Of a DNA stretch of 50,892 nt, positions 17,222-41,638 are shown one piece after another. Each line of letters starts with the position of its first letter. Within the stretch, counting starts at the first letter, position 1. The notes under the pieces are model-generated. The model was given only the letters and a program-made list of their open reading frames with translations, was not told the origin of the DNA and made no database searches. The DNA lies in contig NIVC01004311.1 of the NCBI GenBank assembly GCA_002269645.1, forward strand, positions 1 through 50,892. Direction: 5' to 3'. This stretch comes from Macrostomum lignano. Taxonomy: Eukaryota. The position numbers and the translations under genes were made by a program.

Positions 17222-17416
<195 letters not shown>

Positions 17417-20414: not shown

Positions 20415-20962
20415 GCCACTCACCCTGTCTCTGCCACTGTCCACCAGCCAGCCTCCCCTGTCCCTGCCACTGTCCACCAGCCAGCCTCCCCTGTCCCTGC
20501 CACTGTCCACCAACCAGCCTCCCCTGTCCCTGCCACTGTCCACCAGCCAGCCTCCCCTGTCTCTGCCACTGTCCACCAGCCAGCCTCCCCTGTCTCTGCC
20601 ACTGTCCACCAGCCAGCCTCCCCTGTCTCTGCCACTGTCCACCAGCCAGCCTCCCCTGTCTCTGCCACTGTCCACCAGCCAGCCTCCCCTGTCTCTGCCA
20701 CTGTCCACCAGCCAGCTCGCCCTGTCCCTGCCACTGTCCACCAGCCAGCCAGCCTCCCCTGTCTCTGCCACTGTCCACCAGCCAGCCTCCCCTGTCTCTG
20801 CCACTGTCCACCAGCCAGCCTCCCCTGTCTCTGCCACTGTCCACCAGCCAGTCTCCCCTGTCTCTGCCACTGTCCACCAGCCACTCTCCATCTGTCTCTG
20901 CCACTGTCCACCAGCCACTCTCCATCTGTCTCTGCCACTGTCCACCAGCCACTCTCCATCTG
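20415..20962. repeat. 33-bp minisatellite (CCCTGTCTCTGCCACTGTCCACCAGCCAGCCTC)n
   Basis: Direct 33-bp periodicity, about 16 copies. Confidence 0.96.
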
Positions 20963-22544
20963 TCTCTTCCTTCTCTATTCCTTCTCTTCCTTATCTCTAT
21001 CCGCTCCAATCTCAAGCTTTTAAACTGGAGTCCCGGTTTCCATGCCGTCTCCCTCACAGCTTAAAACCTCCAGCCTGGGGGGGGGGGTCAATTATGCTCA
21101 AATAACACCTGCATTAGTGTGGTGCATGTCAAACAGAAACATTGATAAGGCAGGCAGGCAGGTACACAGAAAAAGCGATCACATGTCCAAATTCAGCCCA
21201 TAGCTTTGTCAGTGCAATCAACGCAGTGTCCATCAAGCAGCCAAAATCGAGCAGTGACACGAACTGACTGATGATGGACAGGTTGACAGGCTGATTAGTG
21301 CAGCACAGCCTCGCTGTAGGAACAGATTTTTAACGAAGCATGTTGCAGCCGGCCGTGATATTAACAATTGATACGAGGGCCGTGATCCGCATCTATGAAT
21401 ACGTGCAGCAAAAATGAATGGCTGTCAAAATCAGCCACACCTTTATATGCCCCAGTGAAGCCCCCCCCTCAGTCACGACCGCCGCCTTATCTCTCCCTCT
21501 GTCACTTCACACTGCATTTCAACAAACTGCCTCTTTCAACTTCTTTCTTGCACTAGAAATTTCTTCTTCACTGACACACACCCGCGCTTCATTTGTGTGC
21601 CCCCAGGGAGCGGGAGTGTGCAGTTGAAGACGAGCTCTTGACAAAGAGAAGCACAGGAAATCCTCGGCTTTGTTGTTCAATCGATAGTCGGAGCTGCTTC
21701 AATCTACCTAGACAGGCGCAGAAGAGGTTGTTCGAAAATTTTCAATTTTAACAAGAGAGTAAAACAAGCCCGTTGTCAAAGCCCGACTTGGGACTGGAGT
21801 GTGTTTAGTCTATGGCCCAACCCCCCCCCCCCCGCAGCGCTGGTCCATCGCCCGTCTACACTTGTAACCTGAATACTGTGAAGGGGAGAGGGGAGGGGCG
21901 CACGATCCCCCCCCCTCCCCGGCACCCCGAGGCTTGCCCGGGTGTGCCGTGGCCGAGAGAGACGAAAGCAGAAGTGGCCCGGGCTTGCTTGAAGCCACCT
22001 GTTGCTCGCCGATGCCATTCAAAACAGTTTGTGCTCGCTTCAGAGAGACAGACGGGGCAGGCAGACACGAAGGCCAGAGAAGTGTTTGCTTCTAGCAGCC
22101 AGCCAGTCCAATCAACTTTTGTGAATTTCTTTGTGAACCGTAAAAACTTGTAGTGGGCGAGGCACGCGTCGGGATGGCTTTGATTGACAATTTGTTAAAA
22201 TGATTGATAGATTAATAGGGGCGACAATGTTCACTGGGATATTGAAGGGAAACCGCATTTTTGCACAACTAGACCAAGCTTTGAGGCTATGAAATTAAGA
22301 TTGACGTTGTGACACATCGACTCAAACCCCTCAAGTCTGAGTCGAGGTTTAAAAAATTCAATTGTATCACCCACTTTCGCACCAAAGTCAATGCACCTGG
22401 AGCTGGCAGTCATAATGAATGGAGGCTCGCATCGTCGCACCTCACGCAATGGCATTAAGGCAGAAAGGTAGCTTCAGATTTCTATAACAATTGCAACACC
22501 CTCACAATTTACCTTGTGACAGCTATAAATTCTATTGGCCTCCG

Positions 22545-22880
22545 TAACACCCTCAGTAACACCCCTACAATTCTGCACTCACACTGCAACACCCTCAGTA
22601 ACAGCCCCACCATTCCACACCCACTCTGCAACACCCTCAGTAGCAGCCCCACCATTCCACACCCACTCTGCAACACCCTCAGTAGCAGCCCCACCATTCC
22701 ACACCCACTCTGCAACACCCTCAGTAGCAGCCCCACCATTCCACACCCACTCTGCAACACCCTCAGTAGCAGCCCCACCATTCCACACCCACTCTGCAAC
22801 ACCCTCAGTAGCAGCCCCACCATTCCACACCCACTCTGCAACACCCTCAGTAACAGCCCCACCATTCCAGACCCACTGTA
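22545..22880. repeat. 42-bp minisatellite (ACCCTCAGTAGCAGCCCCACCATTCCACACCCACTCTGCAAC)n
   Basis: About 8 direct copies. Confidence 0.96.
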
Positions 22881-23464
22881 ACAATGAAGGCAAGTGAAGC
22901 ACTTGCAAACGGCAGAGCCAACCTGGCCCAAACCGCATCAGCCATGCGGTCGGGATTCATGGGAATATTCGACCTCCGCGCCAGCTGAGCCGGCAATTCT
23001 GCAGCGGTCCCGATTCAAAAATTGGCCGCTTTGTGTGGAGGCGCCGGCCCTGCAAAGCGAACTCGGAGCGGCTAAGATTAAAAGCAAAACGAGGCTTTGG
23101 CCTTTCATCCACCCCGCCTTCCATCGAGCTTTGCCGGCTGCAGCGATAAGATAGCGGAAAAAACACCGTTAAACCTGAGCAGTCTGATGCAGCTCAAACA
23201 TGCGCTGTGCCGCAGACTCCACCGCAGCTCTGCAGACTTGTGCGGGATGGGATCCAAGCATAAATCAGGGCTAGCAACCCTGGGCCCAGTTCCTCCTATT
23301 CGCTTGGAGACAAAAATGGCGTTTTCTACGTCCCCGAAAACTTGCTCGAACCTGTCAATCATCAACCGCCTGGAAACAATTTTGAAAATTTATCTGAGTC
23401 TCCAAGGGCAATTAATATTATCTGGCGGAGTTGGCAGGTGGAGATGTCTGGTCACTAAGCTATA

Positions 23465-24612
23465 GATATCCAAAAATCTATTCCTGCCTTCATGATCTCT
23501 ATCCAAGTATCTATTACTGCCTTCATGATCTCTATCCAAGTATCTATTCCTGCCTTCACGATCTCTATCCAAGTATCTATTCCTGCCTTCACGATCTCTA
23601 TCCAAGTATCTATTCCTGCCTTCACGATCTCTATCCAAGTATCTATTCCTGCCTTCATGATCTCTATCCAAGTATCTATTCCTGCCTTCACGATCTCTAT
23701 CCAAGTATCTATTCCTGCCTTCACGATCTCTATCCAAGTATCTATTCCTGCCTTCACGATCTCTATCCAAGTATCTATTCCTGCCTTTATGATCTCTATC
23801 CAAGTATCTATTCCTGCCTTCATGATCTCTATCCAAGTATCTATTCCTGCCTTCACGATCTCTATCCAAGTATCTATTCCTGCCTTCACGATCTCTATCC
23901 AAGTATCTATTCCTGCCTTCACGATCTCTATCCAAGTATCTATTCCTGCCTTCACGATCTCTATCCAAGTATCTATTCCTGCCTTCACGATCTCTATCCA
24001 AGTATCTATTCCTGCCTTTATGATCTCTATCCAAGTATCTATTCCTGCCTTTAAGACCTCTATCCAAATATCTATTCCTGCCTTCATGATCTCTATCCAA
24101 GCATCTATTCCTGCATTCATGATCTCTATCCAAGTATCTATTCCTGCCTTCATGATCTCTATCCAAATATCTATTCCTGCCTTCATGATCTCTATCCAAG
24201 TATCTATTCCTGCATTCATGATCTCTATCCAAGCATCTATTCCTGCATTCATGATCTCTATCCAAGCATCTATTCCTGCATTCATGATCTCTATCCAAAT
24301 ATCTATTCCTGCCTTCATGATCTCTATCCAAGCATCTATTCCTGCATTCATGATCTCTATCCAAGTACCTATTCCTGCCTTCATGATCTCTATCCAAGTA
24401 TCTATTCCTGCCTTCATGACCTCTATCCAAGTATCTATTCCTGCCTTCACGATCTCTATCCAAGTATCTATTCCTGCCTTCATGATCTCTATCCAAGTAC
24501 CTATTCCTGCCTTCATGATCTCTATCCAAATATCTATTCCTGCCTTCATGATCTCTATCCAAGTATCTATTCCTGCCTTCATGATCTCTATCCAAGTATC
24601 TATTCCTGCCTT
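23465..24612. repeat. 33-bp minisatellite (TATCCAAGTATCTATTCCTGCCTTCA(C/T)GATCTC)n
   Basis: About 35 direct copies with point variants. Confidence 0.97.
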
Positions 24613-25519
24613 CTTAGTTATCGCTTCTCTGTTCTCGCAATAATTTTTTATACTTCGATCTTAACTGACGAGTAATTTGACCCATTTTGGATAGTTTCTT
24701 CGAACCCCTCAATAAATGTAACTCCCGCAATTATATCCATTTGTTTATTGCTCCACCGCAGCAGGAGAACGGATCAGCGCAGCTTCCAATTCCTGCTCCG
24801 CCAGTTGCTGCAACCGTTGCCGCAGAAATCCCGGGAAAGGCCAGTCGCAGCTTTCACTGTCCCCTCGGCATATCCAGCTGTCAATCTGGCCGCCTGCCCA
24901 GCCCCAGAGTAGCATCATCATGGACAGGCCGCCCCCGCTCCCTCCCGACACCCTCCATCGACGGGAGGCCCCGCTGCCAATCAGGCGCCCTCAACAATCA
25001 CTCCCGGTCCTCCTTGAGCTTGCTTAGGCCGGCAGCCTTCCCCCTGACACCGTCCAAGATACTGACTGGCAGCTGTCAGTCAAAACCCGTGTCTGTGTGC
25101 TACACTGTTAAAACTGCGCCTCGAGAGGCGATGCCGAGGCAGCGGGGAGAGCAGGCGAGAAGAGCGTCTTATTGTGCGACTGGCTGCCTATCTGCAGCCT
25201 GTCTGTCTGTCCGTCTGTCTCTCTTTCTGCGGCCACTAATTGCTAGCATCAGCGGGACCTCTTCAAGCCGTTGGGGGTCTCGGCCTCCCGCCGCCCCTCT
25301 TCCCAGCCTTCCCCGACTTCCCCGCGGCTAAAGACACTCAAACTTTCTGCGAAGTAGAGGAGTGGCGCTAAGAGACGAATTCAGGGAGTTGCTCCTTCTG
25401 GCAGTGATCTGACTTGCGTGTCTGCCTGTCAGAGCTGCTCAACAAGCGGCTTGACTCAACACCAAACTTGCAGTGCTTGACTAAAGCAGTCAGTGTTTGA
25501 TCGCTCTGTTGTCGGATAG

Positions 25520-27917
25520 ACATCTATCAGTCTCGAATATAGTCACCCGTCAATCTCATATAGGCATCTATCAGTCTCGAATATAGTCACCCGTCAATCT
25601 CATATAGGCATCTATCAGTCTCGGAAATATATACTCGTGCATCTATCACAGCAGGATATAGACATCCATCAGAGCAGGATATAGACACCATTAGAGCAGG
25701 ATATTGACATCCGTCAGAGCAGGATATAGACATCCATCAGAGCAGGATATAGACACCATTAGAGCAGGATATTGACATCCGTCAGAGCAGGATATAGACA
25801 TCCATCAGAGCAGGATATAAACATCGATTAGAGCAGGATATATAGACATTCATCAGAGCAGGATATAGACACCATTAGAGCAGGATATTGACAACCGTCA
25901 GAGCAGGATATAGACATCCATCAGAGCAGGATATAAACATCGATTAGAGCAGGATATATAGACATTCATCAGAGCAGGATATAGACACCATTAGAGCAGG
26001 ATATTGACAACCGTCAGAGCAGGATATAGACATCCATCAGAGCAGGATATAAACATCGATTAGAGCAGGATATATAGACATTCATCAGAGCAGGATATAG
26101 ACACCATTTAGAGTAGGATATTGACATCCGTCAGAGCAGGATATAGACATTGATCAGAGCAGGATATAAACATCGATTAGAGCAGGATATTGACATCCGT
26201 CAGAGCAGGATATAGACATCCATCAGAGCAGGATATAAACATCGATTAGAGCAGGATATAGACATTCATCAGAGCAGGATATAGACACCATTAGAGCAGG
26301 ATATTGACATCCATCAGAGCAGGATATAGACATCCGTCAGAGCAGAATATAGACATTGATCAGAGCAGGATATAAACATCGATTAGAGCAGGATATAGAC
26401 ATTCATTAGAGCAGGATATAAACATCGATTAGAGCAGGATATTGACATCCATCAGAGCAGGATATAGACATCCGTCAGAGCAGGATATAGACATCCATCA
26501 GAGCAGGATATAAACATCGATTAGAGCAGGATATAGACATTCATCAGAGCAGGATATAGACACCATTAGAGCAGGATATTGACATCCATCAGAGCAGGAT
26601 AAAGACATCCGTCAAAGCAGGATATAGACACTGATCAGAGCAGGATATAAACATCGATTAGAGCAGGATATAGACATTCATCAGAGCAGGATCTAGACAC
26701 CATTAGAGCAGGATATAGACATTCATCAGAGCAGGATCTAGACACCATTAGAGCAGGATATTGACATCCATCAGAACAGGATATAAACATCGATTAGAGC
26801 AGGATATAGACATTCATCAGAGCAGGATATAGACACCATTAGAGCAGGATATTGACATCCATCAGAGCAGGATATAGACATCCGTCAGAGCAGGATATAG
26901 ACATTGATCAGAGCAGGATATAAACATCGATTAGAGCAGGATATAGACATTCATCAGAGCAGGATATAGACACCATTAGAGCAGGATATTGACATCCATC
27001 AGAGCAGGATATAGACATCCGTCAGAGCAGGATATAGACATCCATCAGAGCAGGATATAAACATCGATTAGAGCAGGATATAGACATTCATCAGAGCAGG
27101 ATATAGACACCATTAGAGCAGGATATTGACATCCATCAGAGCAGGATATAGACATCCGTCAGAGCAGGATATAGACATTGATCAGAGCAGGATATAAACA
27201 TCGATTAGAGCAGGATACAGACATTCATTAGAGCAGGATATAAACATCGATTAGAGCAGGATATTGACATCCATCAGAGCAGGATATAGACATCCGTCAG
27301 AGCAGGATATAGACATCCATCAGAGCAGGATATAAACATCGATTAGAGCAGGATATAGACATTCATCAGAGCAGGATATAGACACCATTAGAGCAGGATA
27401 TTGACATCCATCAGAGCAGGATATAGACATCCGTCAAAGCAGGATATAGACACTGATCAGAGCAGGATATAAACATCGATTAGAGCAGGATATAGACATT
27501 CATCAGAGCAGGATCTAGACACCATTAGAGCAGGATATTGACATCCATCAGAACAGGATATAAACATCGATTAGAGCAGGATATAGACATTCATCAGAGC
27601 AGGATATAGACACCATTAGAGCAGGATATTGACATCCATCAGAGCAGGATATAGACATCCATCAGAGCAGGATATAGATATCGATCAGAGCAGGATATAG
27701 ACATCCATCAGAGCAGGATATTGACATCCATCAGAGCAGGATATAGACACCATTAGAGCAGGATATAGATATCGATCAGAGTAGGATATAGACATCCATC
27801 AGAGCAGGATATAAAACATCGATTAGAGCAGGATATCGACATCTGTCAGAGCAGGATATAGACATCCATCAGAGCAGGATATAGACATCCATCAGAGCAG
27901 GATATAGACATCCATCA
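25520..27917. repeat. 22-23-bp minisatellite (AGAGCAGGATATAGACATCCATC and variants), about 2.3 kb
   Basis: Invariant AGAGCAGGATA core with several recurring variant tails. It is preceded by two longer related units at about 25520-25620. Confidence 0.97.
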
Positions 27918-29329
27918 GTATAATATCTATCAGTTTCAAATGGCATATTTCAGATACAGATTGTCTCAAGAGTGTCTTGTCAATTGCTCTGTCAAGCACT
28001 GCATTACAACTGGAATGCAGGCAGAACAGAAAATAGAAACTATAGCAGTTGGGCACGCACCTAATTAAAAAATTACCGAACCGCTAATTATAAAAACGAA
28101 GCCATGCTGCAATAAATACGGATAACAGCCTTATCGGTAGGTATAATTATATATATAGGCCTCGAGTCATACAGCCAACCGCTAAATTATCTTTACGACT
28201 GTGACTGAATAGAAATGAATAAGCCAGCAGAGTAAAGCATATAAAGATAATTTATTGTGCCACAGAGAGAGACTTTATATATTGTTCAATTGATATAATA
28301 TAATAAAAGGAATGTGCGACTATGCAGTTATATTTTTGTCCATAAATGACGTGGTTGAACGAGTTTTAAATTGGCAGACAAGTTATTAAAACACAATTTT
28401 AATAAATGAAATTTTATGAGGCAATTTCTAGAATTAACGCAAGCAAGTGGACGCTTAGCACATCAGATCGCTTTAAAAAGTAAATTTATTTGACAACTAA
28501 TGTCCTAACTATGCTACTCAAAGCATTGTCTGTCAGTAGTATAAGAGCGGACACAATCGATTCAGCATTTTTGTCAACAATAGTAAAAAACCTGACACAC
28601 ATAATAAAACCTTTAAAACCATATGTGCAGTTTTCTATGAAGCAAAAAACGAAGATTCACACAAAAACAGAAAAAATTGCAGGAGTCAGAGAAAAAGAGA
28701 GAAAGTGACTGGAATGCAGGGATAGTTTGACTAACATAGAATTGATTAATAAGCAGTTTGAGATTATAAAAACACGTGTCCACAGTACACTACTCACCCC
28801 GACAGTAGGTAAGTAGTGCAATCCAACATAAATAAACGCGGGAGGCACAGCCATCTAAGCGGGATAAAAAGTGTTGTATAAAACGGAGATCGTATTGCAA
28901 TTGGTTTACGTAAAACTAGGGAAAAATCAGACAACAATTGCACAACAGCTCACATAAAACGCTACTTAATCAGTAATATATATATATAGTGTACAGTTTG
29001 GACAATAAGAGGTAACAAACTCAGATTATTAGTACATATATACATTGAGACACTAGAACTGACTTATCCGACGCATATGATATTAAACTACTGCCAACTC
29101 AGTAGTATATAAATTTCTGCAAGTACTTCAAAAAGCCCCGGCAAGGCAGTAAGAATTGACTAGAGCATCGAAAAGTGACGAAGCAACTTTCCTATGCTTG
29201 TACTTATTCAATGCTTGCCATTTCAGTTGCAACTAACCTGCTAAACACTGGGAAAGACGCACAAAAAAGATACAAAAAGGTGACGCTACACATCAAGTCT
29301 TTAGCTAAAAGCTTCAGTTGGGTTGCTAA

Positions 29330-29450
29330 TCACACAACCAGGTGATTCAGCATGCGCTCAGGATCCAGTGCAGTGTACAGGTACACCGGGTCGCGGTTGC
29401 TGTTGCGCGATTTGATGCTGGCGCTGGCGGCCGCCAATTCCTCCTTGAAC
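29330..29450 (-). CDS. Lipoxygenase-like protein, exon 6 (C-terminus)
   Basis: CTAATATTCCCAG|G acceptor, phase 2. Reads (E)FKEELAAASASIKSRNSNRDPVYLYTALDPERMLNHLVV*, matching the LOX C-terminal pattern I..RN....PY.YL.P..I.NS..I. Confidence 0.85.
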
Positions 29451-29531
29451 CTGGGAATATTAGCGGTGGCGGGTTCCATTTTTTTCTTGACTGTCTTCGC
29501 TCCTAATCTTTGCTCTACCATGTAAAGTAAG

Positions 29532-29710
29532 TAATGTAATCAGCCATTAGTGAGTCGTCAAGCCAAAAGGTGCAAGAAGGCACAGCGGCAGTGACTCGTG
29601 GAGAAGGCCGATCTCACGCGTTCTGTAGACTCGCGCTGACCCCAGACTGCTATGCTGTTGCACAATATTGGAATTATACACAGAGCGGACCGGCAACACT
29701 GGCGAGTCAG
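29532..29710 (-). ncRNA. Box H/ACA snoRNA, copy 1 of 11 (intronic)
   Basis: Hairpin-H box (ACAGAA)-hairpin-ACA+3 nt. Pockets complementary to 18S rRNA UUGAC-U-C-AACAC and UUAGU-U-G-GUGGAG. ACA box about 85 nt from the 3' splice site. Confidence 0.85.
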
Positions 29711-30036
29711 CAAACAAACTGCCTGTTGCTAAAGCACTAGATACTTTGCATTTGTCAGGCATTTTTAATGCACTTGATCACTAAAAAAGTGCTTTTGTAA
29801 GTTGTAATTTGGTAAATATCTTCACCTGACATTATGCAGCCTAATTTTAACTAACTCGTAGTTTAATCATTTTAAAGTGACTTCCCATAGTTATTAAAGG
29901 CACAAACCAAGAACGCACTAAAGTCTATTAAGTTGTAGGCGAGCCAAGAACTGTTTAAATATTAACTAGAGTCTTTGTTTAACGACTGGTTAAACCCTAT
30001 TTGGTCCTTGATATACTGATTACTAAAAAGATATCA

Positions 30037-30215
30037 GACTGTAATCAGCCGTTAGTGAGTCGTCAAGCCAAAAGGTGCAAGAAGGCACAGCGGCAGTGAC
30101 TCGTGGAGAAGGCCGATCTCACGCGTTCTGTAGACTCGCGTTGACCCCAGACTGCTATGCTGTTGCACAATAATGGATTTGTGCACAGAGCGGACCGGCA
30201 ACACTGGCGAGTCAG
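30037..30215 (-). ncRNA. Box H/ACA snoRNA, copy 2 of 11
   Basis: 179-nt unit. Stems GACTCGC/GCGAGTC and ATCGGCC/GGCTGAT, H box ACAGAA, terminal ACAGTC. Confidence 0.87.
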
Positions 30216-30571
30216 AGACTATCATTGACTAGCCCGTCTGTCCAATAGCTACATCACTGTTTCGCTGAGGTACATTTTGCATGCCTTTGATCACTACACA
30301 TGTGGCTTGTTTAGTATCTTGAGAGTGTCTTTATTTGTAATCGGATTTGTCAAGTTCAAAAAAGGCCTCTACAAGTCACATCAAACGTTTTGCTTGAATT
30401 CAAAGCTTACGATATGTATTTGGACAAAAGATGAGCTAATTGCAAACTTATTTATCATTTTAAGGTGGTAATCAAGTCGTGGACCGCTTACATATTAATT
30501 TGAGTCAATGTTTAACGACTAGTCGAATCTTCGTTTGGTCCGTGCCATAAATTATTGCTAAAACAATATCA

Positions 30572-30750
30572 GACTGTAATCAGCCATTAGTGAGTCGTCA
30601 AGCCAAAAGGTGCAGGGAGGCATAGCGGCAGTGACTCGTGGAGAAGGCCGATCTCACGCGTTCTGTAGACTCGCGTTGACCTCAGACTGCTATGCTGTTG
30701 CACATCAATGAAATTATGCACAGAGCGGACCGGCAACACTGGCGAGTCAG
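30572..30750 (-). ncRNA. Box H/ACA snoRNA, copy 3 of 11
   Basis: Same unit with apical-loop variants. Confidence 0.85.
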
Positions 30751-31205
30751 CAGCATAAGTAACCAATGGTGTATAAGCCAATGCTACGCGGATGACTGCC
30801 TGGTAATCTTATTGCATAATGGGCGTTTTGTCACTATTAAAATGATCCATTGCTCCGCAAGACACCTTTCTTTAGACACTACATGGCATACAAGGATTTA
30901 TCTGTAATTATCTTTGCTTCTTTATTACCAGTAGAACATTTATCACTTAACAGCCCTAACAACAATATCTGGAAGGTTGTGGACACTCTGGTGCAACGGT
31001 ATCGGCGACATCGTCTCACAACCAGCGCTGAGGCAATTCTGTCCATCCTGTGGTCTTCAGAAAGCATGCTCATACAAGGTGTACACTGTACATCGACTCC
31101 GACCTTCTAATCCTCAAACATCTACACTCTGTGTCTTGGGTTGGCTCTCATGGGTGAATCGTAAGATAGCTACGGGAAATTTTCTGTGTAAAAGCAACAA
31201 ATGAA

Positions 31206-31278
31206 TGCGGTCGCGCATGGAGTCGAACTAGGAGTTTGGCAAGAGAGTAAGACGCGTTTACCGCTGAGCAACTCCGCA
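31206..31278 (-). other. Degenerate tRNA-like sequence (tRNA pseudogene or SINE head) inside a snoRNA spacer
   Basis: 73 nt, TGCGGAGTTGCTCAGCGGTAAACGCG...TAGTTCGACTCCATGCGCGACCGCA. Has an A-box-like TTGCTCAGCGG, a B-box GTTCGACTC and terminal TGCGG/CCGCA pairing. D and anticodon stems do not pair well. Confidence 0.55.
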
Positions 31279-31408
31279 TCGTACCTAATTACCAGCCTTA
31301 AAGTCTAATGCAGTTTCGAGAAATTACTATTCGTTTTTCAATTCTTTCAACCTAATCACCAAAGAAATATAATATGAAAATGGCAATTAACCATTCTCAA
31401 AAACAACA

Positions 31409-31587
31409 GATTGTAATCAGCCGTTAGTGAGTCGACAAGCCAAAAGGTGCAAGAAGGCACAGCGGCAGTGACTCGTGGAGAAGGCCGATCTCACGCGTTC
31501 TGTAGACTCGCGTTGACCCCAGACTGCTATGCTGTTGCACAATAATGGATTTGTGCACAGAGCGGACCGGCAACACTGGCGAGTCAG
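31409..31587 (-). ncRNA. Box H/ACA snoRNA, copy 4 of 11
   Basis: Same unit; boxes and both pockets intact. Confidence 0.85.
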
Positions 31588-31943
31588 AGACTATCATTGA
31601 CTAGCCCGTCTGTCCAATAGCTACATCACTGTTTCGCTGAGGTACATTTTGCATGCCTTTGATCACTACACATGTGGCTTGTTTGGTATCTTGAGAGTGT
31701 CTTTATTTGTAATCGGATTTGTCAAGTTCAAAAAAGGCCTCTACAAGTCACATCAAACGTTTTGATTGAATTCAAAGCTTACGATATGTATTTGGACAAA
31801 AGATGAGCTAATTGCAAACTTATTTATCATTTTAAGGTGGTAATCAAGTCGTGGACCGCTTACATATTAATTTGAGTCAATGTTTAACGACTAGTCGAAT
31901 CTTCGTTTGGTCCGTGCCATAAATTATTGCTAAAACAATATCA

Positions 31944-32122
31944 GACTGTAATCAGCCATTAGTGAGTCGTCAAGCCAAAAGGTGCAAGGAGGCATAGCGG
32001 CAGTGACTCGTGGAGAAGGCCGATCTCACGCGTTCTGTAGACTCGCGTTGACCCCAGACTGCTATGCTGTTGCACATCAATGAAATTATGCACAGAGCGG
32101 ACCGGCAACACTGGCGAGTCAG
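31944..32122 (-). ncRNA. Box H/ACA snoRNA, copy 5 of 11
   Basis: Same unit, copy-3-type variant. Confidence 0.85.
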
Positions 32123-32447
32123 CAAACAAACTGCCTGTCTGCTAAAGCACTAAAATGTATTGTTCAGGCACTTTTCATGCCTTGTATCACGACAAGAGTG
32201 CTTTTGCCCGTTGTAAGTTCGTGGATATCTTTACCTGACATTATGCAGCCTAATTTTAACTTACTCGTAGTTTAACCATTTTAAGTGACTTTCGCATAAT
32301 TATTAGACCACCAACCAAGAACGCATTAAGGCCTATTAAGTTGTAGGCGAGTCAAGAACTGTTTAAATATTAACTAGAGTCTTTGTTTTACAGCAGGTTA
32401 CAGCATTATTTGGTTTTTGTCATACTGATTACTAAAAAGATTTCAGA

Positions 32448-32626
32448 GACTGTAATCAGCCGTTAGTGAGTCGTCAAGCCAAAAGGTGCAAGGAGGCACA
32501 GCGGCAGTGACTCGTGGAGAAGGCCGATCTCACGCGTTCTGTAGACTCGCGTTGACCCCAGACTGCTATGCTGTTGCGCAATAATGAAATTGTGCACAGA
32601 GCGGACCGGCAACACTGGCGAGTCAG
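32448..32626 (-). ncRNA. Box H/ACA snoRNA, copy 6 of 11
   Basis: Same unit; one mismatch in the apical stem of hairpin 1. Confidence 0.85.
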
Positions 32627-32919
32627 CAAACAAACTGCCTGTTGCGCACTTCTCAGGAATTCTTAATGCACAGGATCACTACAAAAGTGCTTTTGTCTAT
32701 TTAAGCTTGTATATATCTTTATCTGGCATTATGCGGGTTAATTTTCATTTAGTTAATTCAATTAAGAGTGATTCTTGCTTATCTACGAGTATTAGGGATC
32801 TAACTGCTAACTTGCATCAAGTGATGGACTGTTTAGAAAATGATCCAAGTCATTGTTTAATGACTGGTTAAATATTCGGTTGGTCCTCGCCGTAAGAATA
32901 TTGCTAAAACAATATCAGA

Positions 32920-33098
32920 GACTGTAATCAGCCGTTAGTGAGTCGTCATGCCAAAAGGTGCAAGAAGGCACGGCGGCAGTGACTCGTGGAGAAGGCCGAT
33001 CTCACGCGTTTTGTAGACTCGCGTTGACCCCAGACTGCTATGCTGTTGCACAATAATGGATTTGTGCACAGAGCGGACCGGCAACACTGGCGAGTCAG
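32920..33098 (-). ncRNA. Box H/ACA snoRNA, copy 7 of 11
   Basis: Same unit; H box is ACAAAA, still ANANNA. Confidence 0.85.
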
Positions 33099-33445
33099 AG
33101 ACTAACATTAATTAACCTTTCTGCTGAAAATCTACTCCATCATTGTACAGATATCTCTATTTGTCATCATACAGGTTAACTTCCAATTTCCATATACATT
33201 CAATAGAACTGCTTTTATTTGAAAGTGCAGAGACGTTCAAGTTACATCAAAGGTCCTAAGTCAATTCGAAGCTTACTGATATATGCGCTCGTATTTAGAC
33301 AAAAGCGATGCCAATTCAAAAGTTGTTTGTCCTTTTGAAGTTGTAATCTAGTCAGACTGTTTGGATATTAATCTGAGTCACAGTGTACCGACTAGAAAAA
33401 TCTGTTTGGTCCTGCCGTACTATTTATTACCAACAATATAGATCA

Positions 33446-33624
33446 GACTGTAATCAGCCGTTAGTGAGACGTCAAGCCAAAAGGTGCAAGAAGGCACAGC
33501 GGCAGCGACTCGTGGAGAAGGCCGATCTCACGCGTTCTGTAGACTCGCGTTGACCCCAGACTGCTATGCTGTTGCACAATAATGAAATTGTGCACAGAGC
33601 GGACCGGCAACACTGGCGAGTCAG
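33446..33624 (-). ncRNA. Box H/ACA snoRNA, copy 8 of 11
   Basis: Same unit; substitutions in the upper stem of hairpin 2. Confidence 0.82.
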
Positions 33625-33945
33625 CAAACAAACTGCCTGTTGCTAAAGCACCAGAGATGTTGCACTTCTCAGGCATTCTTAATGCACTGGATCACTACTG
33701 TACAAAAGTGATTTTATAATTTTGTAAATATCTTTACCTGACATTATGTTGCTTAATTTTACACTAGTAACTTACTCGTAGTTAATCATTTTAAAGTGAC
33801 TTTCGCATAGTTATTACCAAGAATGCATTAAGGTCTATTAAGTTGTAGTCGAGCCAAGAACTGTTTAAATATAACTAGAGTCTTTGTTTCACGACTGGTT
33901 AAACCCTATTTGGTCCTTGATTTACTGATTACTAAGAAGATATCT

Positions 33946-34124
33946 GACTGTAATCAGCCGTTAGTGAGTCGTCAAGCCAAAAGGTGCAAGAAGGCACAGC
34001 GGCAGTGACTCGTGGAGAAGGCCGATCTCACGCGTTCTGTAGACTCGCGTTGACCCCAGACTGCTATGCTGTTGCACAATAATGGATTTGTGCACAGAGC
34101 GGACCGGCAACACTGGCGAGTCAG
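33946..34124 (-). ncRNA. Box H/ACA snoRNA, copy 9 of 11
   Basis: Same unit as copy 2. Confidence 0.87.
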
Positions 34125-34480
34125 AGACTATCATTGACTAGCCCGTCTGTCCAATAGCTACATCACTGTTTCGCTGAGGTACATTTTGCATGCCTTTGAT
34201 CACTACACATGTGGCTTGTTTAGTATCTTGAGAGTGTCTTTATTTGTAATCGGATTTGTCAAGTTCAAAAAAGGCCTCTACAAGTCACATCAAACGTTTT
34301 GCTTGAATTCAAAGCTTACGATATGTATTTGGACAAAAGATGAGCTAATTGCAAACTTATTTATCATTTTAAGGTGGTAATCAAGTCGTGGACCGCTTAC
34401 ATATTAATTTGAGTCAATGTTTAACGACTAGTCGAATCTTCGTTTGGTCCGTGCCATAAATTATTGCTAAAACAATATCA

Positions 34481-34659
34481 GACTGTAATCAGCCATTAGT
34501 GAGTCGTCAAGCCAAAAGGTGCAAGGAGGCATAGCGGCAGTGACTCGTGGAGAAGGCCGATCTCACGCGTTCTGTAGACTCGCGTTGACCCCAGACTGCT
34601 ATGCTGTTGCACATCAATGAAATTATGCACAGAGCGGACCGGCAACACTGGCGAGTCAG
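34481..34659 (-). ncRNA. Box H/ACA snoRNA, copy 10 of 11
   Basis: Same unit as copy 5. Confidence 0.85.
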
Positions 34660-34984
34660 CAAACAAACTGCCTGTCTGCTAAAGCACTAAAATGTATTGT
34701 TCAGGCACTTTTCATGCCTTGTATCACGACAAGAGTGCTTTTGCCCGTTGTAAGTTCGTGGATATCTTTACCTGACATTATGCAGCCTAATTTTAACTTA
34801 CTCGTAGTTTAACCATTTTAAGTGACTTTCGCATAATTATTAGACCACCAACCAAGAACGCATTAAGGCCTATTAAGTTGTAGGCGAGTCAAGAACTGTT
34901 TAAATATTAACTAGAGTCTTTGTTTTACAGCAGGTTACAGCATTATTTGGTTTTTGTCATACTGATTACTAAAAAGATTTCAGA

Positions 34985-35163
34985 GACTGTAATCAGCCGT
35001 TAGTGAGTCGTCAAGCCAAAAGGTGCAAGGAGGCACAGCGGCAGTGACTCGTGGAGAAGGCCAATCTCACGCGTTCTGTAGACTCGCGTTGACCCCAGAC
35101 TGCTATGCTGTTGCACAATAATGGAATTGTGCACAGAGCGGACCAGCAACACTGGCGAGTCAA
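34985..35163 (-). ncRNA. Box H/ACA snoRNA, copy 11 of 11
   Basis: Same unit; two stem C>U changes retain G-U wobble pairing. Confidence 0.85.
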
Positions 35164-35295
35164 TAAACCTATGAAACCATACTGAATTGTCGAATGCTTT
35201 TAACCGGGTGAAAAATGAATCCTTATTTCGTAGTGCGTAAATTGATGTGAGTAATTTATCAGTCTGAGAAACACAACAGCAGAATAAAAACTCAC

Positions 35296-35459
35296 TCTTG
35301 CAGCATCCTGACGGCCGCTGGATCGTGGTTCAGCTGCAGCTCGTACTCGCCAAGCCGGCTGCCTCGCTGGCGCTGGCACAGGCGAAAGGACAGCAGCGTG
35401 TCTAGGAATTCCCGCTTGCAGGGCAGCGTCTGGAGGCTCTCGTCTAGAGCCAGGTCCTC
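35296..35459 (-). CDS. Lipoxygenase-like protein, exon 5
   Basis: CGCAG|GAG acceptor (phase 0). Reads EDLALDESLQTLPCKREFLDTLLSFRLCQRQRGSRLGEYELQLNHDPAAVRMLQ. Donor GA|GTGAGT (phase 2). This frame is not in the ORF track. Confidence 0.85.
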
Positions 35460-35589
35460 CTGCGATGTTTTTGGGTGAATCCAGGTGAAGCAATAATAAT
35501 TTAATACATTTAATAATCCGGAATAATTACCTTTCTAAACTGACACACAACCCATCTTACTAAACCTGACAACAACCATAGCAATCCTG

Positions 35590-35928
35590 CCCAACCAACA
35601 CCCATCCCAACAATCCCCAACCAACACCCATCCCAACAATCCCCACCAACACCCACTCCAACAATCCCCCAACCAACACCCACTCCAACAATCCCCCAAT
35701 CGACAGCCACTCCAACAATCCCCCAACCAACACCCATCCCAACAATCCCCAATCAACACCCACTCCAACAATTCCCCAACCAACACCCACCCCCAACAAT
35801 CCCCCAACCAACACCCATCCCAACAATCCCCAACCAACACCCACTCCAACAATCCCCAACCAACACCCACTCCAACAATCCCCCAACCAACCCCCACCCC
35901 CAACACTCCCCAACCAACACCCACCCAA
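35590..35928. repeat. About 27-bp C/A-rich minisatellite (CCAACAATCCCCAACCAACACCCACT) in LOX intron 4
   Basis: About 12 degenerate direct copies. Confidence 0.92.
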
Positions 35929-35974
35929 ACAGTGCCGCCTCAGCTCTAAATACAGGCAACAAGGCGAAACTCAC

Positions 35975-36326
35975 GGCAGGATCCTGCGGCAGGCAGCCGT
36001 GCAGGGCCAGGGGATAATTAGGCGCGAATCCGTACTCGTCAAACTGGGGATTCCAGGCGGCGGAGCCCTGCACGCAGATCATAAACAGGAAGTTGGTTAT
36101 CAGCGACACCAACTCGTCTACGTGTTGAATGCCATTTTTGCCGGGCAGACCTTTGAGTCCGAGGCCGCCCTTCTCTAACGGGTTGGTCATTTCAACCCAC
36201 CAGGCCTGCAGTTCGATGTCTTCCATTAGTCGGCGCTTCATCGCCTCCATAGGGTTGGCGTAGTAGTGACGGGACAGGCGGTCGCTGTAGCCGTTGATCA
36301 CTTTGTGGAGCAGCATGGCGTCTTCG
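35975..36326 (-). CDS. Lipoxygenase-like protein, exon 4
   Basis: ACGCCAG|C acceptor (phase 2). Reads EDAMLLHKVINGYSDRLSRHYY...DIELQAWWVEMT...KGLP...NPQFDEYGFAPNYPLALHG. Donor GCC|GTGAGT (phase 0). Confidence 0.9.
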
Positions 36327-36494
36327 CTGGCGTTTCGGGCAAGGATTGGGATGGGTTTCATGAAATTGGTGCATATCTGCAGCTGCTGGAATGAGTGTTC
36401 ACCGACACATTTTCTCTAATGTCGGGGGAGGTGTCATATTTCGACAGATCAGTTCAACAGACTCTTTCACAACTGCGAAACTTCAAATCTTCGC

Positions 36495-39400
36495 CTCCTC
36501 ATATCTCCGCCACTGTATATCCCCGACACTTCATATCCCCAACATTTCATATCCCTGACATTTCATATCCCTGACATTTCATATCTCCGACACTTCATAA
36601 CTCCGCCACTGTATATCCCCGACACTTCATATCCCTGACATTTCATATCCCTGACATTTCATATCCCTGACATTTCATATCTCCGACACTTCATATCTCC
36701 GCCACTGTATATCCCCGACACTTCATATCCCTGACATTTCATATCCCTGACATTTCATATCTCCGACACTTCATAACTCCGCCACTGTATATCCCCGACA
36801 CTTCATATCCCTGACATTTCATATCCCTGACATTTCATATCCCTGACATTTCATATCCCTGACATTTCATATCCCTGACATTTCATATCGCCGACACTTC
36901 ATATCCCTGACATTTCATATCCCTGACATTTCATATCCCTGACATTTCATATCGCCGACACTTCATATCCCTGACATTTCATATCCCTGACATTTCATAT
37001 CCCTGACATTTCATATCGCCGACACTTCATATCTCCGCCACTGTATATCCCCGACACTTCATATCCCTGACATTTCATATCCCTGACATTTCATATCCCT
37101 GACATTTCATATCTCCGACACTTCATAACTCCGCCACTGTATATCCCCGACACTTCATATCCCTGACATTTCATATCTCCGACACTTCATATCTCCGCCA
37201 CTGTATATCCCCAACATTTCATATCCCTGACATTTCATATCCCTGACATTTCATATCCCTGACATTTCATATCCCTGACATTTCATATCTCCGACACTTC
37301 ATATCTCCGCCACTGTATATCCCCAACATTTCATATCCCTGACATTTCATATCTCCGACACTTCATATCTCCGCCACTGTATATCCCCGACACTTCATAT
37401 CCCAACATTTCATATCCCTGACATTTCATATCCCTGACATTTCATATCCCTGACATTTCATATCCCTGACATTTCATATCCCTGACATTTCATATCTCCG
37501 CCACTGTATATCCCCGACACTTCATATCCCTGACATTTCATATCCCTGACATTTCATATCCCTGACATTTCATATCTCCGCCACTGTATATCCCCGACAC
37601 TTCATATCCCTGACATTTCATATCTCCGACACTTCATATCTCCGCCACTGTATATCCCCGACACTTCATATCCCAACATTTCATATCCCTGACATTTCAT
37701 ATCCCTGACATTTCATATCCCTGACATTTCATATCTCCGCCACTGTATATCCCCAACATTTCATATCCCTGACATTTCATATCTCCGCCACTGTATATCC
37801 CCGACACTTCATATCCCAACATTTCATATCCCTGACATTTCATATCCCTGACATTTCATATCCCTGACATTTCATATCCCCGACATTTCATATCCCTGAC
37901 ATTTCATATCGTCGCCACTGTATATCCCCAACATTTCATATCCCTGACATTTCATATCCCTGACATTTCATATCCCTGACATTTCATATCTCCGACACTT
38001 CATATCTCCGCCACTGTATATCCCCGACACTTCATATCCCTGACATTTCATATCCCTGACATTTCATATCCCTGACATTTCATATCTCCGACACTTCATA
38101 TCTCCGCCACTGTATATCCCCGACACTTCATATCCCTGACATTTCATATCCCTGACATTTCATATCTCCGCCACTGTATATCCCCGACACTTCATATCCC
38201 CAACATTTCATATCTCCGACACTTCATATCTCCGCCACTGTATATCCCCGACACTTCATATCCCAACATTTCATATCCCTGACATTTCATATCCCTGACA
38301 TTTCATATCCCTGACATTTCATATCTCCGCCACTGTATATCCCCAACATTTCATATCCCTGACATTTCATATCCCCAACATTTCATATCCCTGACATTTC
38401 ATATCTCCGCCACTGTATATCCCCGACACTTCATATCCCTGACATTTCATATCTCCGACACTTCATATCTCCGCCACTGTATATCCCCGACACTTCATAT
38501 CCCTGACATTTCATATCTCCGCCACTGTATATCCCCGACATTTCATATCCCTGACATTTTATATCCCTGACATTTCATATCCCTGACATTTCATATCCCT
38601 GACATTTCATATCCCTGACATTTCATATCGTCGCCACTGTATATCCCCAACATTTCATATCCCTGACATTTCATATCCCCAACATTTCATATCCCTGACA
38701 TTTCATATCTCCGCCACTGTATATCCCCGACACTTCATATCCCTGACATTTCATATCTCCGACACTTCATATCTCCGCCACTGTATATCCCCGACACTTC
38801 ATATCCCAACATTTCATATCCCTGACATTTCATATCCCTGACATTTCATATCCCTGACATTTCATATCCCTGACATTTCATATCGTCGCCACTGTATATC
38901 CCCAACATTTCATATCCCTGACATTTCATATCCCTGACATTTCATATCTCCGACACTTCATATCTCCGCCACTGTATATCCCCGACACTTCATATCCCTG
39001 ACATTTCATATCCCTGACATTTCATATCCCTGACATTTCATATCTCCGACACTTCATAACTCCGCCACTGTATATCCCCGACACTTCATATCCCTGACAT
39101 TTCATATCTCCGACACTGTATATCCCCAACATTTCATATCCCTGACATTTCATATCCCTGACATTTCATATCTCCGACACTTCATATCTCCGCCACTGTA
39201 TATCCCCGACACTTCATATCCCCAACATTTCATATCCCTGACATTTCATATCCCTGACATTTCATATCCCTGACATTTCATATCCCTGACATTTCATATC
39301 CCTGACATTTCATATCGTCGCCACTGTATATCCCCAACATTTCATATCCCTGACATTTCATATCTCCGCCACTATATATCCCCGACACTTCATATCCCTG

Positions 39401-40130
39401 ACATTTCATATCTCCGACACTTCATATCTCCGCCACTGTATATCCCCGACACTTCATATCCCTGACATTTCATATCTCCGCCACTGTATATCCCCGACAC
39501 TGTATATCCCCGACACTTCATATCCCAACATTTCATATCCCTGACATTTCATATCCCTGACATTTCATATCCCTGACATTTCATATCTCCGCCACTGTAT
39601 ATCCCCAACATTTCATATCCCTGACATTTCATATCTCCGCCACTGTATATCCCCGACACTTCATATCCCAACATTTCATATCCCTGACATTTCATATCCC
39701 TGACATTTCATATCCCTGACATTTCATATCCCTGACATTTCATATCCCTGACATTTCATATCGTCGCCACTGTATATCCCCAACATTTCATATCCCTGAC
39801 ATTTCATATCCCTGACATTTCATATCCCTGACATTTCATATCTCCGACACTTCATATCTCCGCCACTGTATATCCCCGACACTTCATATCCCTGACATTT
39901 CATATCCCTGACATTTCATATCCCTGACATTTCATATCTCCGACACTTCATAACTCCGCCACTGTATATCCCCGACACTTCATATCCCTGACATTTCATA
40001 TCTCCGACACTGTATATCCCCAACATTTCATATCCCTGACATTTCATATCCCTGACATTTCATATCTCCGACCCTTCATATCTCCGCCACTGTATATCCC
40101 CGACACTTCATATCCCCAACATTTCATATC
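36495..40130. repeat. 16-bp minisatellite (CATATCCCTGACATTT, CATATCTCCGCCACTG, TATATCCCCGACACTT), about 3.6 kb, LOX intron 3
   Basis: More than 200 units built from three to five interleaved variant 16-mers. Confidence 0.98.
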
Positions 40131-40270
40131 TACAAAACTTCATATCTTCAAGCTTAACCTTAACCCTAACTTAACGTTTCGGGAGTTGTGAAAGAGGCTG
40201 TGTCAGAGATATAAAACCCCTCTTGTCGAGAAACAATGAGGCTATTCTATGAGGCTTAGTGAAACCTTAC

Positions 40271-41590: not shown

Positions 41591-41638
41591 CAAGGTTATC
41601 GTTACTAACCCTGCCCAAAGCAATAATAAAAAGCCTAC

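What the first reader, a model, noticed from the sequence alone, without database searches (positions are those of the whole stretch)
30037..30215. One guide appears to target two conserved 18S sites that use separate snoRNAs in human and yeast
Pocket 1 strands GUCAA (3') and GUGUU(G) (5') pair with 18S UUGAC-U-C-AACAC. From recalled conserved 18S sequence, this U is human U1248 / yeast U1191, the precursor of m1acp3-psi near the decoding site (guides SNORA13/ACA13 and snR35). Pocket 2 strands ACUAA (3') and CUCCAC (5') pair with UUAGU-U-G-GUGGAG, human U1347 / yeast U1290 (guides SNORA4/ACA4 and snR83). Two independent pockets each hitting a known pseudouridine at the correct 14-nt register is unlikely by chance. 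The pairing of these two specificities in one molecule suggests hairpin shuffling (inference).
Basis: partly seen in the sequence, partly recalled or inferred. Interest (0 to 1): 0.8.

Follow-up and report, generated by a model that had tools for sequence, protein, structure and literature searches.

The report
Tandem dual-target H/ACA snoRNA array
The flagged stretch is one of eleven tandem copies of a box H/ACA small nucleolar RNA in the last intron of a flatworm-like lipoxygenase gene. Its two guide pockets match two conserved pseudouridine sites in 18S rRNA, which makes it a real but fairly ordinary new member of a well-known RNA class.

Summary
On the minus strand, 30214-30037 is a canonical hairpin-H box-hairpin-ACA RNA of 178 nt.

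**Targets.** I tested the pockets on real eukaryotic rDNA.
- The 3' hairpin pocket has one strong hit, UUAGU-U-G-GUGGAG in 18S (5+6 Watson-Crick pairs).
- The 5' hairpin pocket's best hit is UUGAC-U-C-AACAC in 18S (5+5 pairs).
- Both target U's lie 14 nt from the ACA or H box and 99 nt apart. That equals yeast 1191/1290 and human 1248/1347, the snR35/SNORA13 and snR83/SNORA4 sites.
- The 5' pocket match is weak alone. The 3' match is significant alone, and the two together are convincing.

- There are eleven copies, 96% identical, while their spacers are only 60-65% identical.
- All eleven sit in one 5,845-nt intron of a lipoxygenase gene whose closest relatives are trematode and cestode proteins.

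**Limits.** No Rfam family matches. No orthologue from another species could be retrieved. There is no covariation and no expression data.

**Origin.** "Hairpin shuffling" cannot be tested here. Regrouping of guide functions between lineages is already documented, and so are intronic snoRNA clusters.

**Verdict.** New member of a known kind, of modest interest.

The parts
30037..30214 (-). Reference copy of the 178-nt box H/ACA snoRNA (the finding)
   Evidence: Sequence read. MFE fold shows two hairpins, -61.5 kcal/mol, z = -1.8. Boundaries coincide with the sharp drop in conservation between repeat units.
30199..30206 (-). Pocket 1, 5' strand CAGUGUUG. GUGUU pairs with 18S AACAC, 3' of the target U-C.
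   Evidence: Invariant in all 11 copies.
30140..30146 (-). Pocket 1, 3' strand GGUCAAC. GUCAA pairs with 18S UUGAC, 5' of the target U. 14 nt follow the first pairing G before the H box.
   Evidence: One copy has GUCAG, which keeps pairing through G-U.
30126..30131 (-). H box ACAGAA (ANANNA)
   Evidence: One copy has ACAAAA, which still fits ANANNA.
30103..30110 (-). Pocket 2, 5' strand UUCUCCAC. CUCCAC pairs with 18S GUGGAG.
   Evidence: Invariant in all copies.
30051..30056 (-). Pocket 2, 3' strand ACUAAC. ACUAA pairs with 18S UUAGU. 14 nt from its first base to the ACA box.
   Evidence: Only the last, non-pairing base varies, C/U.
30040..30042 (-). ACA box, 3 nt before the inferred 3' end
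   Evidence: Invariant. Conservation decays right after it.
29532..29709 (-). snoRNA copy 11, the last in transcription order. It ends 80 nt before the 3' splice site.
30572..30749 (-). snoRNA copy
31409..31586 (-). snoRNA copy. Its unit is 837 nt because the spacer carries an extra stretch of about 330 nt.
31944..32121 (-). snoRNA copy
32448..32625 (-). snoRNA copy
32920..33097 (-). snoRNA copy (H box ACAAAA)
33446..33623 (-). snoRNA copy
33946..34123 (-). snoRNA copy, identical to the reference copy
34481..34658 (-). snoRNA copy
34985..35162 (-). snoRNA copy 1, the first in transcription order. It starts 133 nt after the 5' splice site.
29451..35295 (-). Inferred last intron of the lipoxygenase gene (GUGAGU...CCCAG, 5,845 nt). 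It holds all 11 copies.
   Evidence: Splice sites and reading frame read. No RNA data.
35296..35459 (-). Penultimate lipoxygenase exon
   Evidence: tblastn with the Echinostoma caproni lipoxygenase P0001, residues 350-402, E = 0.017. The spliced product matches lipoxygenase C-termini.
29330..29450 (-). Last lipoxygenase exon, including the TGA stop
   Evidence: The spliced 94-aa C-terminus aligns colinearly with the last ~90 residues of coral and human lipoxygenases in PDB. All 10 hits are lipoxygenases, best E = 0.017.

Best explanation
Each of the eleven 178-nt units is a gene for a canonical box H/ACA snoRNA. The units are transcribed as part of the last intron of a lipoxygenase gene on the minus strand.

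By analogy with all known H/ACA RNPs, the RNA should assemble with dyskerin/Cbf5, Nop10, Nhp2 and Gar1 and act on pre-18S rRNA with both hairpins.
- The 5' hairpin pocket clamps UUGAC-U-C-AACAC in the helix 31 loop. It would convert the U equivalent to yeast U1191 / human U1248 to pseudouridine. This is the first step towards m1acp3-pseudouridine, later completed by Emg1/Nep1 and Tsr3.
- The 3' hairpin pocket clamps UUAGU-U-G-GUGGAG and would convert the U equivalent to yeast U1290 / human U1347.

One RNA thus combines the jobs of snR35/SNORA13 and snR83/SNORA4.

Shown here: the architecture, the boxes, the 14-nt spacing, the complementarity, the copy number, the selective conservation and the intron context. 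Inferred: expression, RNP assembly, actual pseudouridylation, and how several snoRNAs are released from one intron (probably endonucleolytic cuts in the spacers followed by exonucleolytic trimming).
For: - Architecture, boxes and 14-nt register are read from the sequence.
- On real rDNA, the 3' pocket has one strong hit (5+6 pairs, -9.4 kcal/mol; 17/1000 shuffles reach this anywhere). The 5' pocket's best-energy hit in both rDNA sets is the helix 31 site.
- The two target U's are 99 nt apart, as are yeast 1191/1290 and human 1248/1347. At the exact sites, only 29 and 31 of 200000 shuffled pockets do as well.
- The sites and their guides are documented.
- Chicken ACA13 also uses a short 5+6 duplex in its 5' hairpin, and ACA4 uses its 3' hairpin.
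- The eleven copies are 96% identical to each other while their flanks are 60-65% identical, and conservation drops exactly at the snoRNA ends. This argues for selection on the RNA.
- The pocket 5' strands, the ACA box and both lower stems are invariant or change only to G-U.
- The array shares strand and intron with a lipoxygenase gene. The last copy ends 80 nt before the 3' splice site.
Against: - There is no expression, RNP or pseudouridine data.
- No orthologue from another species could be retrieved, and the paralogues are too alike to give compensatory changes: 0 double changes.
- The 5' pocket pairing (5+5, A/U-rich, with one spare G on each side of the pocket top) is reached somewhere in rRNA by 35% of shuffled pockets.
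- A weaker alternative exists in 28S: 6+6 pairs, 4 of them G-U.
- The host species' own 18S was not available. The motifs were checked on environmental eukaryotic rDNA only.
- No Rfam family detects the RNA.
- Conservation restricted to the snoRNA could in principle come from localized gene conversion rather than selection.
Confidence: 0.65

Rival explanations
1. It is a genuine H/ACA snoRNA, but only the 3' hairpin is a true rRNA guide (the U1290/U1347 equivalent). The 5' pocket would be an orphan or serve another substrate, for example the 28S site GAUUUUGAUU[U]UCAGUACG or an snRNA, and the match to the helix 31 site would be coincidental.
For: - The pocket 1 match is only 5+5 pairs at -5.8 kcal/mol, and 355/1000 shuffled pockets reach that somewhere in rRNA.
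- One unpaired G sits on each side at the top of the pocket.
- An alternative 6+6 pairing with 28S sits flush against the upper stem.
Against: - The helix 31 site is the best-energy hit in both rDNA sets.
- It falls exactly on a known, universally conserved pseudouridine; the site-specific shuffle rate is 1.5e-4.
- The 14-nt register is correct.
- The vertebrate guide for this site is just as short, 5+6, and also in the 5' hairpin.
- The 28S alternative needs 4 G-U pairs and scores -2.7 kcal/mol.
- Pocket 1 is conserved in all 11 copies, and its one change keeps pairing with the 18S site.
Confidence: 0.2
2. The array is a decaying or non-expressed tandem repeat, that is snoRNA pseudogenes or a satellite that happens to look like an H/ACA RNA, with no current function.
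For: - No expression data.
- Parts of the array are very recent segmental duplications, with spacers 100% identical between units 34658, 32121 and 30749.
- The window is full of other tandem repeats.
Against: - Between old unit types the spacers have diverged to 60-70% identity, yet the 178-nt core stays 93-100% identical, with sharp edges.
- Boxes, lower stems and guide strands are intact in all 11 copies.
- Two independent pockets hit known pseudouridine sites in register.
Confidence: 0.07
3. The copies are not released from one long intron. The spacers would contain short cassette exons of a nested or alternative non-coding host transcript, restoring the usual one-snoRNA-per-intron arrangement.
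For: In some unit types the spacer carries a plausible 3' splice site (UUUAAACAG|UU) about 85 nt after the snoRNA, and a 5' splice site (GUCAG|GUAAAG or GUGAAG) about 120 nt further on. A modestly conserved block, 0.68-0.73 identity, lies at that 3' site.
Against: - Both sites are present in only some units. Type B units have GCGG instead of CAG and AAAUAAAG instead of GGUAAAG, and another unit has AGAUAAAG. The putative exons are therefore not conserved.
- The flanking lipoxygenase exons join in frame with consensus GUGAGU...CCCAG sites across the whole array.
Confidence: 0.2

Closest known systems
SNORA13 (ACA13) / yeast snR35
   Same: It has the same predicted job: an H/ACA pocket for the 18S helix 31 U (human U1248, yeast U1191), the first step of m1acp3-pseudouridine. 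As in chicken ACA13, the guide lies in the 5' hairpin and uses a short duplex, 5+5 here against 5+6 there.
   Different: No Rfam covariance model, SNORA13 included, matches even at E <= 10. Here the other hairpin carries a second, well-matched rRNA guide. The gene is present in 11 tandem copies in a lipoxygenase intron, whereas human SNORA13 is a single copy in a lncRNA intron.
SNORA4 (ACA4) / yeast snR83
   Same: It has the same predicted job: an H/ACA pocket for the U in UUAGU-U-G-GUGGAG (human U1347, yeast U1290). As in chicken ACA4, the guide lies in the 3' hairpin, 5+6 here against 7+5 there.
   Different: No detectable sequence or structure homology. Besides U1290, yeast snR83 guides U1415, whereas this RNA's other pocket fits the helix 31 site.
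Intronic snoRNA gene clusters of rice and Drosophila
   Same: Several snoRNA genes lie in one intron of a host gene, on the host's strand (for the published description; for this locus).
   Different: Here the cluster is eleven near-identical copies of one H/ACA snoRNA arranged as a higher-order tandem repeat, in a lipoxygenase gene of a flatworm-like genome. Whether the published clusters include comparable homogeneous arrays could not be checked, because the Drosophila paper is not held.
H/ACA snoRNAs that regroup guide functions between lineages (e.g. N. crassa ACA6, chicken GGgACA27)
   Same: One two-hairpin RNA unites two guide functions that sit on different snoRNAs in yeast or human.
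   Different: This particular pair (U1191/U1248 with U1290/U1347) did not appear in the tables I could read for yeast, chicken, Entamoeba and Neurospora. Drosophila and nematode tables could not be consulted.

Membership tests
Box H/ACA guide snoRNA (class) | Hairpin-hinge-hairpin-tail fold with an H box (ANANNA) in the hinge | tested here: met
   Two hairpins in the MFE fold. The H box is ACAGAA in 10 copies and ACAAAA in 1.
Box H/ACA guide snoRNA (class) | ACA triplet 3 nt from the mature 3' end | tested here: inconclusive
   ACA is invariant, and conservation between units decays right after ACA+3. The true 3' end needs RNA data.
Box H/ACA guide snoRNA (class) | Internal loop (pocket) whose two strands pair with the substrate on either side of an unpaired U-N | tested here: met
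   5+5 and 5+6 Watson-Crick pairs with 18S on real rDNA.
Box H/ACA guide snoRNA (class) | Target U positioned 14-16 nt upstream of the H or ACA box | tested here: met
   14 nt in both hairpins, counted on the sequence.
Box H/ACA guide snoRNA (class) | Stable expression and binding by dyskerin, Nop10, Nhp2 and Gar1 | not testable with these tools
   No transcriptome or RNP data available.
Box H/ACA guide snoRNA (class) | Structure supported by compensatory changes | tested here: inconclusive
   98.3% of cells are paired, but there are 0 double changes among 9 distinct paralogues. Four changes preserve wobble pairing.
SNORA13 / snR35 family (homology) | Match to the family covariance model | tested here: not met
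   No Rfam hit at gathering score or at E <= 10, even on the 201-nt stretch alone.
SNORA13 / snR35 family (function) | 5' hairpin pocket complementary to UUGAC-U-C-AACAC of 18S | tested here: met
   Hairpin position as in chicken ACA13.
SNORA4 / snR83 family (homology) | Match to the family covariance model | tested here: not met
SNORA4 / snR83 family (function) | Pocket complementary to UUAGU-U-G-GUGGAG of 18S | tested here: met
   One strong rRNA hit, reached anywhere by 17/1000 shuffles. Hairpin position as in chicken ACA4.
Intronic snoRNA gene cluster | Two or more snoRNA genes within one intron, on the sense strand of the host gene | tested here: met
   All 11 copies lie between the GUGAGU at 35295 and the AG at 29451 of an in-frame lipoxygenase exon pair. 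The gene model is inferred, with no RNA-seq.
scaRNA (Cajal-body H/ACA RNA) | CAB box (UGAG) in the apical loops | tested here: not met
   The apical loops are AUCCAUUA and CUUCUU. The only UGAG lies in the hinge.

The most novel reading that the evidence does not exclude
The flatworm RNA may preserve an ancestral bifunctional guide. The helix 31 (SNORA13/snR35) function sits in the 5' hairpin and the SNORA4/snR83 function in the 3' hairpin, the same hairpin positions as in the separate vertebrate genes. Those separate genes would then be duplicates that each lost one pocket. In addition, all eleven copies would be matured from one 5.8-kb intron of a lipoxygenase gene, which would require an endonucleolytic snoRNA release pathway not yet described in flatworms.
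Probability: 0.1. Interest if true: 0.55.

Novelty: new member of a known kind. Interest (0 to 1): 0.33.

Why it matters
Flatworm snoRNAs are known almost only as computational candidates. For Schistosoma, 352 H/ACA candidates were reported.

This locus gives a concrete, well-supported H/ACA guide for two conserved pseudouridines in the 18S head domain. One of them is the precursor of m1acp3-pseudouridine next to the P site.

Because one RNA species would serve both sites, a single knock-down in an RNAi-amenable flatworm could test both modifications at once. The homogeneous eleven-copy array in one intron is also a convenient case for asking how clustered intronic snoRNAs are released in animals.

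None of this changes the current picture of H/ACA guides. It extends the catalogue.

Tried and rejected
1. Rfam on the whole window at gathering score, on 29500-30800 at E <= 10, and on the 201-nt stretch alone. No snoRNA family was found; the only hit was a chance 13.7-bit match to Plastid-rpoB.
2. Looking for related species through spurious ORFs. The 53-aa translation of the snoRNA was searched against 5.8 billion proteins, with no candidate.
3. Synteny. The Echinostoma caproni lipoxygenase contig (L001) ends about 620 nt into the orthologous last intron. No copy was found by eye or by nhmmer. The Logan contig L002 is too short.
4. Covariation among the 11 paralogues. There were no compensatory pairs, because there is too little variation.
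5. A pair-counting target scan that allowed G-U freely. It gave many spurious hits for the G/U-rich pocket 1, so I replaced it with a stacking-energy scan and shuffles.
6. The cassette-exon idea for the spacers. The splice-like sites are present in only some unit types.
7. Pfam on the spliced lipoxygenase C-terminus. The model covered only the upstream part, so I used PDB sequences instead.
8. Literature on Drosophila Psi18S guides and their pocket combinations. The key paper is not held, and searches gave nothing usable.
9. I could not decide whether the weak 28S alternative for pocket 1 is a known pseudouridine, for lack of a numbered reference sequence.

Full report
**What is at the coordinates**

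The finding lies on the minus strand. Read 5'->3' from 30214 to 30037, the sequence has these parts:
- A 7-bp lower stem, GACUCGC/GCGAGUC.
- An internal loop with strands CAGUGUUG (5') and GGUCAAC (3').
- A long, imperfect upper stem.
- A hinge with ACAGAA (ANANNA).
- A second hairpin with an 8-bp lower stem, GAUCGGCC/GGCUGAUU.
- An internal loop with strands UUCUCCAC (5') and ACUAAC (3').
- An upper stem that starts GAGUC/GACUC.
- ACA, followed by three more nucleotides.

The minimum-free-energy fold recovers both hairpins (-61.5 kcal/mol, z = -1.8 against shuffles). In each hairpin, exactly 14 nt separate the first target-pairing base of the 3' pocket strand from the H or ACA box. Neither apical loop has a CAB box.

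**Are the targets real?**

The window holds no rDNA, so I fetched eukaryotic rDNA from metagenomes with a pattern joining the two claimed motifs. Rfam confirmed complete 18S, 5.8S and 28S in two divergent units, L003 and L031.

I scanned every U of these rRNAs in the H/ACA register. In that register the 3' pocket strand pairs 5' of the U, the 5' strand pairs 3' of U-N, and I allowed 0-1 spare nucleotide at the pocket top.
- **Pocket 2.** One strong hit, 18S CGUUCUUAGU[U]GGUGGAG, with 5+6 Watson-Crick pairs at -9.4 kcal/mol. It was the only site to pass the energy scan. The looser pair-count scan also listed a weaker 3+7 site in 28S.
- **Pocket 1.** The best-energy hit in both sets is 18S UUAAUUUGAC[U]CAACACGGG, with 5+5 Watson-Crick pairs at -5.8 kcal/mol.

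The two U's are at 1190 and 1289 in L031 and at 1194 and 1293 in L003. They are therefore 99 nt apart, exactly as yeast 1191/1290 and human 1248/1347.

Published tables give these assignments:
- U1191 is m1acp3-pseudouridine, made by snR35, Emg1 and Tsr3. U1290 is guided by snR83.
- snR35 corresponds to ACA13 at human U1248, and snR83 to ACA4 at human U1347.
- SNORA13 guides position 1248, which lies in a HinfI (GANTC) site. That fits GAC[U]C.

**Chance**

- Shuffled versions of pocket 2 reach its energy anywhere in the three rRNAs in 17 of 1000 trials.
- For pocket 1 the figure is 355 of 1000, so its match is not significant alone.
- At the exact site, only 29 (pocket 1) and 31 (pocket 2) of 200,000 shuffled pockets do as well. 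For random-composition pockets the counts are 11 and 3.
- Allowing about 100 known rRNA pseudouridine sites gives roughly 0.015 per pocket, and about 1e-4 or less for both together.
- The chicken guide for the helix 31 site is just as short, 5+6.

A weaker alternative exists for pocket 1: 28S GAUUUUGAUU[U]UCAGUACG, 6+6 pairs of which 4 are G-U, at -2.7 kcal/mol. I could not decide whether that U is a known pseudouridine.

The 5' end motif occurs 11 times on the minus strand, every 472-535 bp with one 837-bp unit. An nhmmer profile finds exactly 11 full-length copies and nothing else in the window. The copies align without gaps over 178 nt.
- Mean pairwise identity is 96% for the RNA. It is 60% for the 120 nt upstream and 65% for the 120 nt downstream.
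- Among the five old unit types, identity is 0.89-1.0 across the RNA. It falls to 0.55-0.7 immediately after ACA+3 and to 0.3-0.6 further on.
- The array is a higher-order repeat. The unit types run A-B-C-D-E-A-B-C*-B-C-last, and some spacers are 100% identical while others are barely alignable.
- The pocket 5' strands, the ACA box and the lower stems are invariant or change only to G-U.
- The one change inside a guide strand (GUCAA to GUCAG in copy 29709) keeps pairing with the 18S U.
- Variation is too low for compensatory changes: 0 double changes and 4 wobble-preserving single changes.

The sharp conservation edges at the predicted RNA ends are the best evidence here that the RNA itself is under selection.

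**Host gene and organism**

The ORFs at 40267-41070, 41635-41952, 43283-43585 and 35753-36361, all on the minus strand, belong to a lipoxygenase. The best database relatives of the catalytic exon are Echinostoma caproni (a trematode, 58% identity) and Dibothriocephalus latus (a cestode, 51%). The window is therefore most likely from a flatworm; this is an inference.

The gene model around the array rests on these results:
- tblastn with the E. caproni protein places its last 53 residues at 35453-35295.
- That exon ends CAAGA|GUGAGU at 35296/35295.
- Downstream of the last snoRNA copy, CCCAG|G at 29451/29450 opens an exon that continues the frame to a TGA at 29332-29330.
- The spliced 94-residue product matches only lipoxygenases in PDB. 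All ten hits align colinearly with their last ~90 residues, best E = 0.017.

All eleven copies thus lie in the sense orientation in one inferred 5,845-nt intron. The first copy starts 133 nt after the 5' splice site, and the last ends 80 nt before the 3' splice site.

Splice-like sites in the spacers are present in only some unit types, so a one-snoRNA-per-intron arrangement through cassette exons is not favoured. Only RNA-seq can settle this. Intronic snoRNA gene clusters have been described in rice and Drosophila.

**How it most likely works**

This part is inference from established H/ACA biology. The intron is transcribed with the lipoxygenase pre-mRNA. Each copy is bound by dyskerin, Nop10, Nhp2 and Gar1. 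The spacers are cut and trimmed back to the RNP boundaries. The mature RNA then uses its 5' hairpin on the helix 31 loop U and its 3' hairpin on the UUAGU-U-G-GUGGAG U of pre-18S. The first product would later be methylated by Emg1/Nep1 and aminocarboxypropylated by Tsr3.

**Comparison with known families**

In function, the RNA equals SNORA13/snR35 plus SNORA4/snR83. As in chicken, the first function sits in the 5' hairpin and the second in the 3' hairpin.

In homology, it is not detectably a member of either family, or of any Rfam family.

The origin of the combination cannot be told from these data. It could be an ancestral bifunctional RNA, a hairpin swap, or a spare pocket re-targeted by mutation. 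Published tables already show one snoRNA uniting functions that are split in other species, for example N. crassa ACA6 with the snR8 and snR5 functions, and chicken GGgACA27. I could not check Drosophila or nematode guides for the same pairing.

Flatworm H/ACA snoRNAs are so far known only as computational candidates.

**Verdict**

- The functional reading is well supported computationally. The 3' pocket is strong; the 5' pocket is credible in context.
- The evolutionary reading is untested.
- The object is a new member of a known class in a known type of genomic arrangement. Interest is modest, at 0.33.

Noticed in passing
window 29188-35162 (-): The snoRNA array is a higher-order repeat. Unit types run A-B-C-D-E-A-B-C*-B-C-last. 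Some spacers are 100% identical (units 34658, 32121, 30749) and others only about 50-70% identical, so old and very recent duplications are mixed.
   Followed up: yes
window 30750-31408 (-): The 837-nt unit carries an extra spacer stretch of about 330 nt with no counterpart in the other units. It has short ORFs and unknown origin, possibly an inserted element.
   Followed up: no
spacers, about 65-100 nt downstream of each snoRNA, e.g. window 29940-29975 (-): This is a second, modestly conserved block (0.68-0.73 identity among old unit types): AAAACAAAGACUCUAGUUAAUAUUUAAACAGUU. It looks like a 3' splice site in some units but not all. It could be a processing signal.
   Followed up: partly
spacers, about 55-100 nt upstream of each snoRNA, e.g. 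window 30265-30310 (-): C-box-like motifs (AGUGAUC; AUGAUGA in unit 33623) are followed about 25 nt later by CUGA in several units, with short flanking inverted repeats. This may be a degenerate box C/D remnant. Rfam found nothing there.
   Followed up: partly
L003 28S position 2691 / L031 28S position 2978: Pocket 1 can also pair with GAUUUUGAUU[U]UCAGUACG of 28S: 6+6 pairs, 4 of them G-U, flush with the upper stem. I did not establish whether this U is a known pseudouridine.
   Followed up: partly
window 29330-43585 (-): A lipoxygenase gene with a PLAT-like first ORF (43283-43585), catalytic exons (41635-41952, 40267-41070, about 35969-36325, 35296-35459) and a last exon (29330-29450). Its C-terminus ends ...NHLVV rather than the usual Ile.
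   Followed up: partly
window 35587-35961: A 27-nt tandem repeat (11 or more copies) lies in the lipoxygenase intron just upstream of the penultimate exon. It produces long spurious Gly/Trp/Val-rich ORFs.
   Followed up: no
window 3880-5985 (-): An ORF with a TALE-class homeodomain (Pfam Homeobox_KN, E = 6e-18). It is preceded in the same frame by a long (CLSV)n run encoded by a tetranucleotide microsatellite, which is probably not coding.
   Followed up: partly
window 14054-14593 (-): An ORF with weak C2H2 zinc-finger matches, below the Pfam cut-offs.
   Followed up: partly
window 5300-5900, 8000-8400, 9580-10500, 17130-17490, 18060-19010, 20190-21060, 22500-22940, 23390-24640, 25500-28000: Numerous micro- and minisatellite arrays, for example a 23-nt unit over about 2.5 kb at 25.5-28 kb and a 33-nt unit at 23.4-24.6 kb. 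They account for most of the long ORFs in the six-frame list.
   Followed up: no
window 1-25000 versus 44000-50892: Base composition shifts strongly, from GC 0.50-0.63 in the first half to 0.30-0.34 at the right end. GC skew is strongly negative at 36-40 kb.
   Followed up: no
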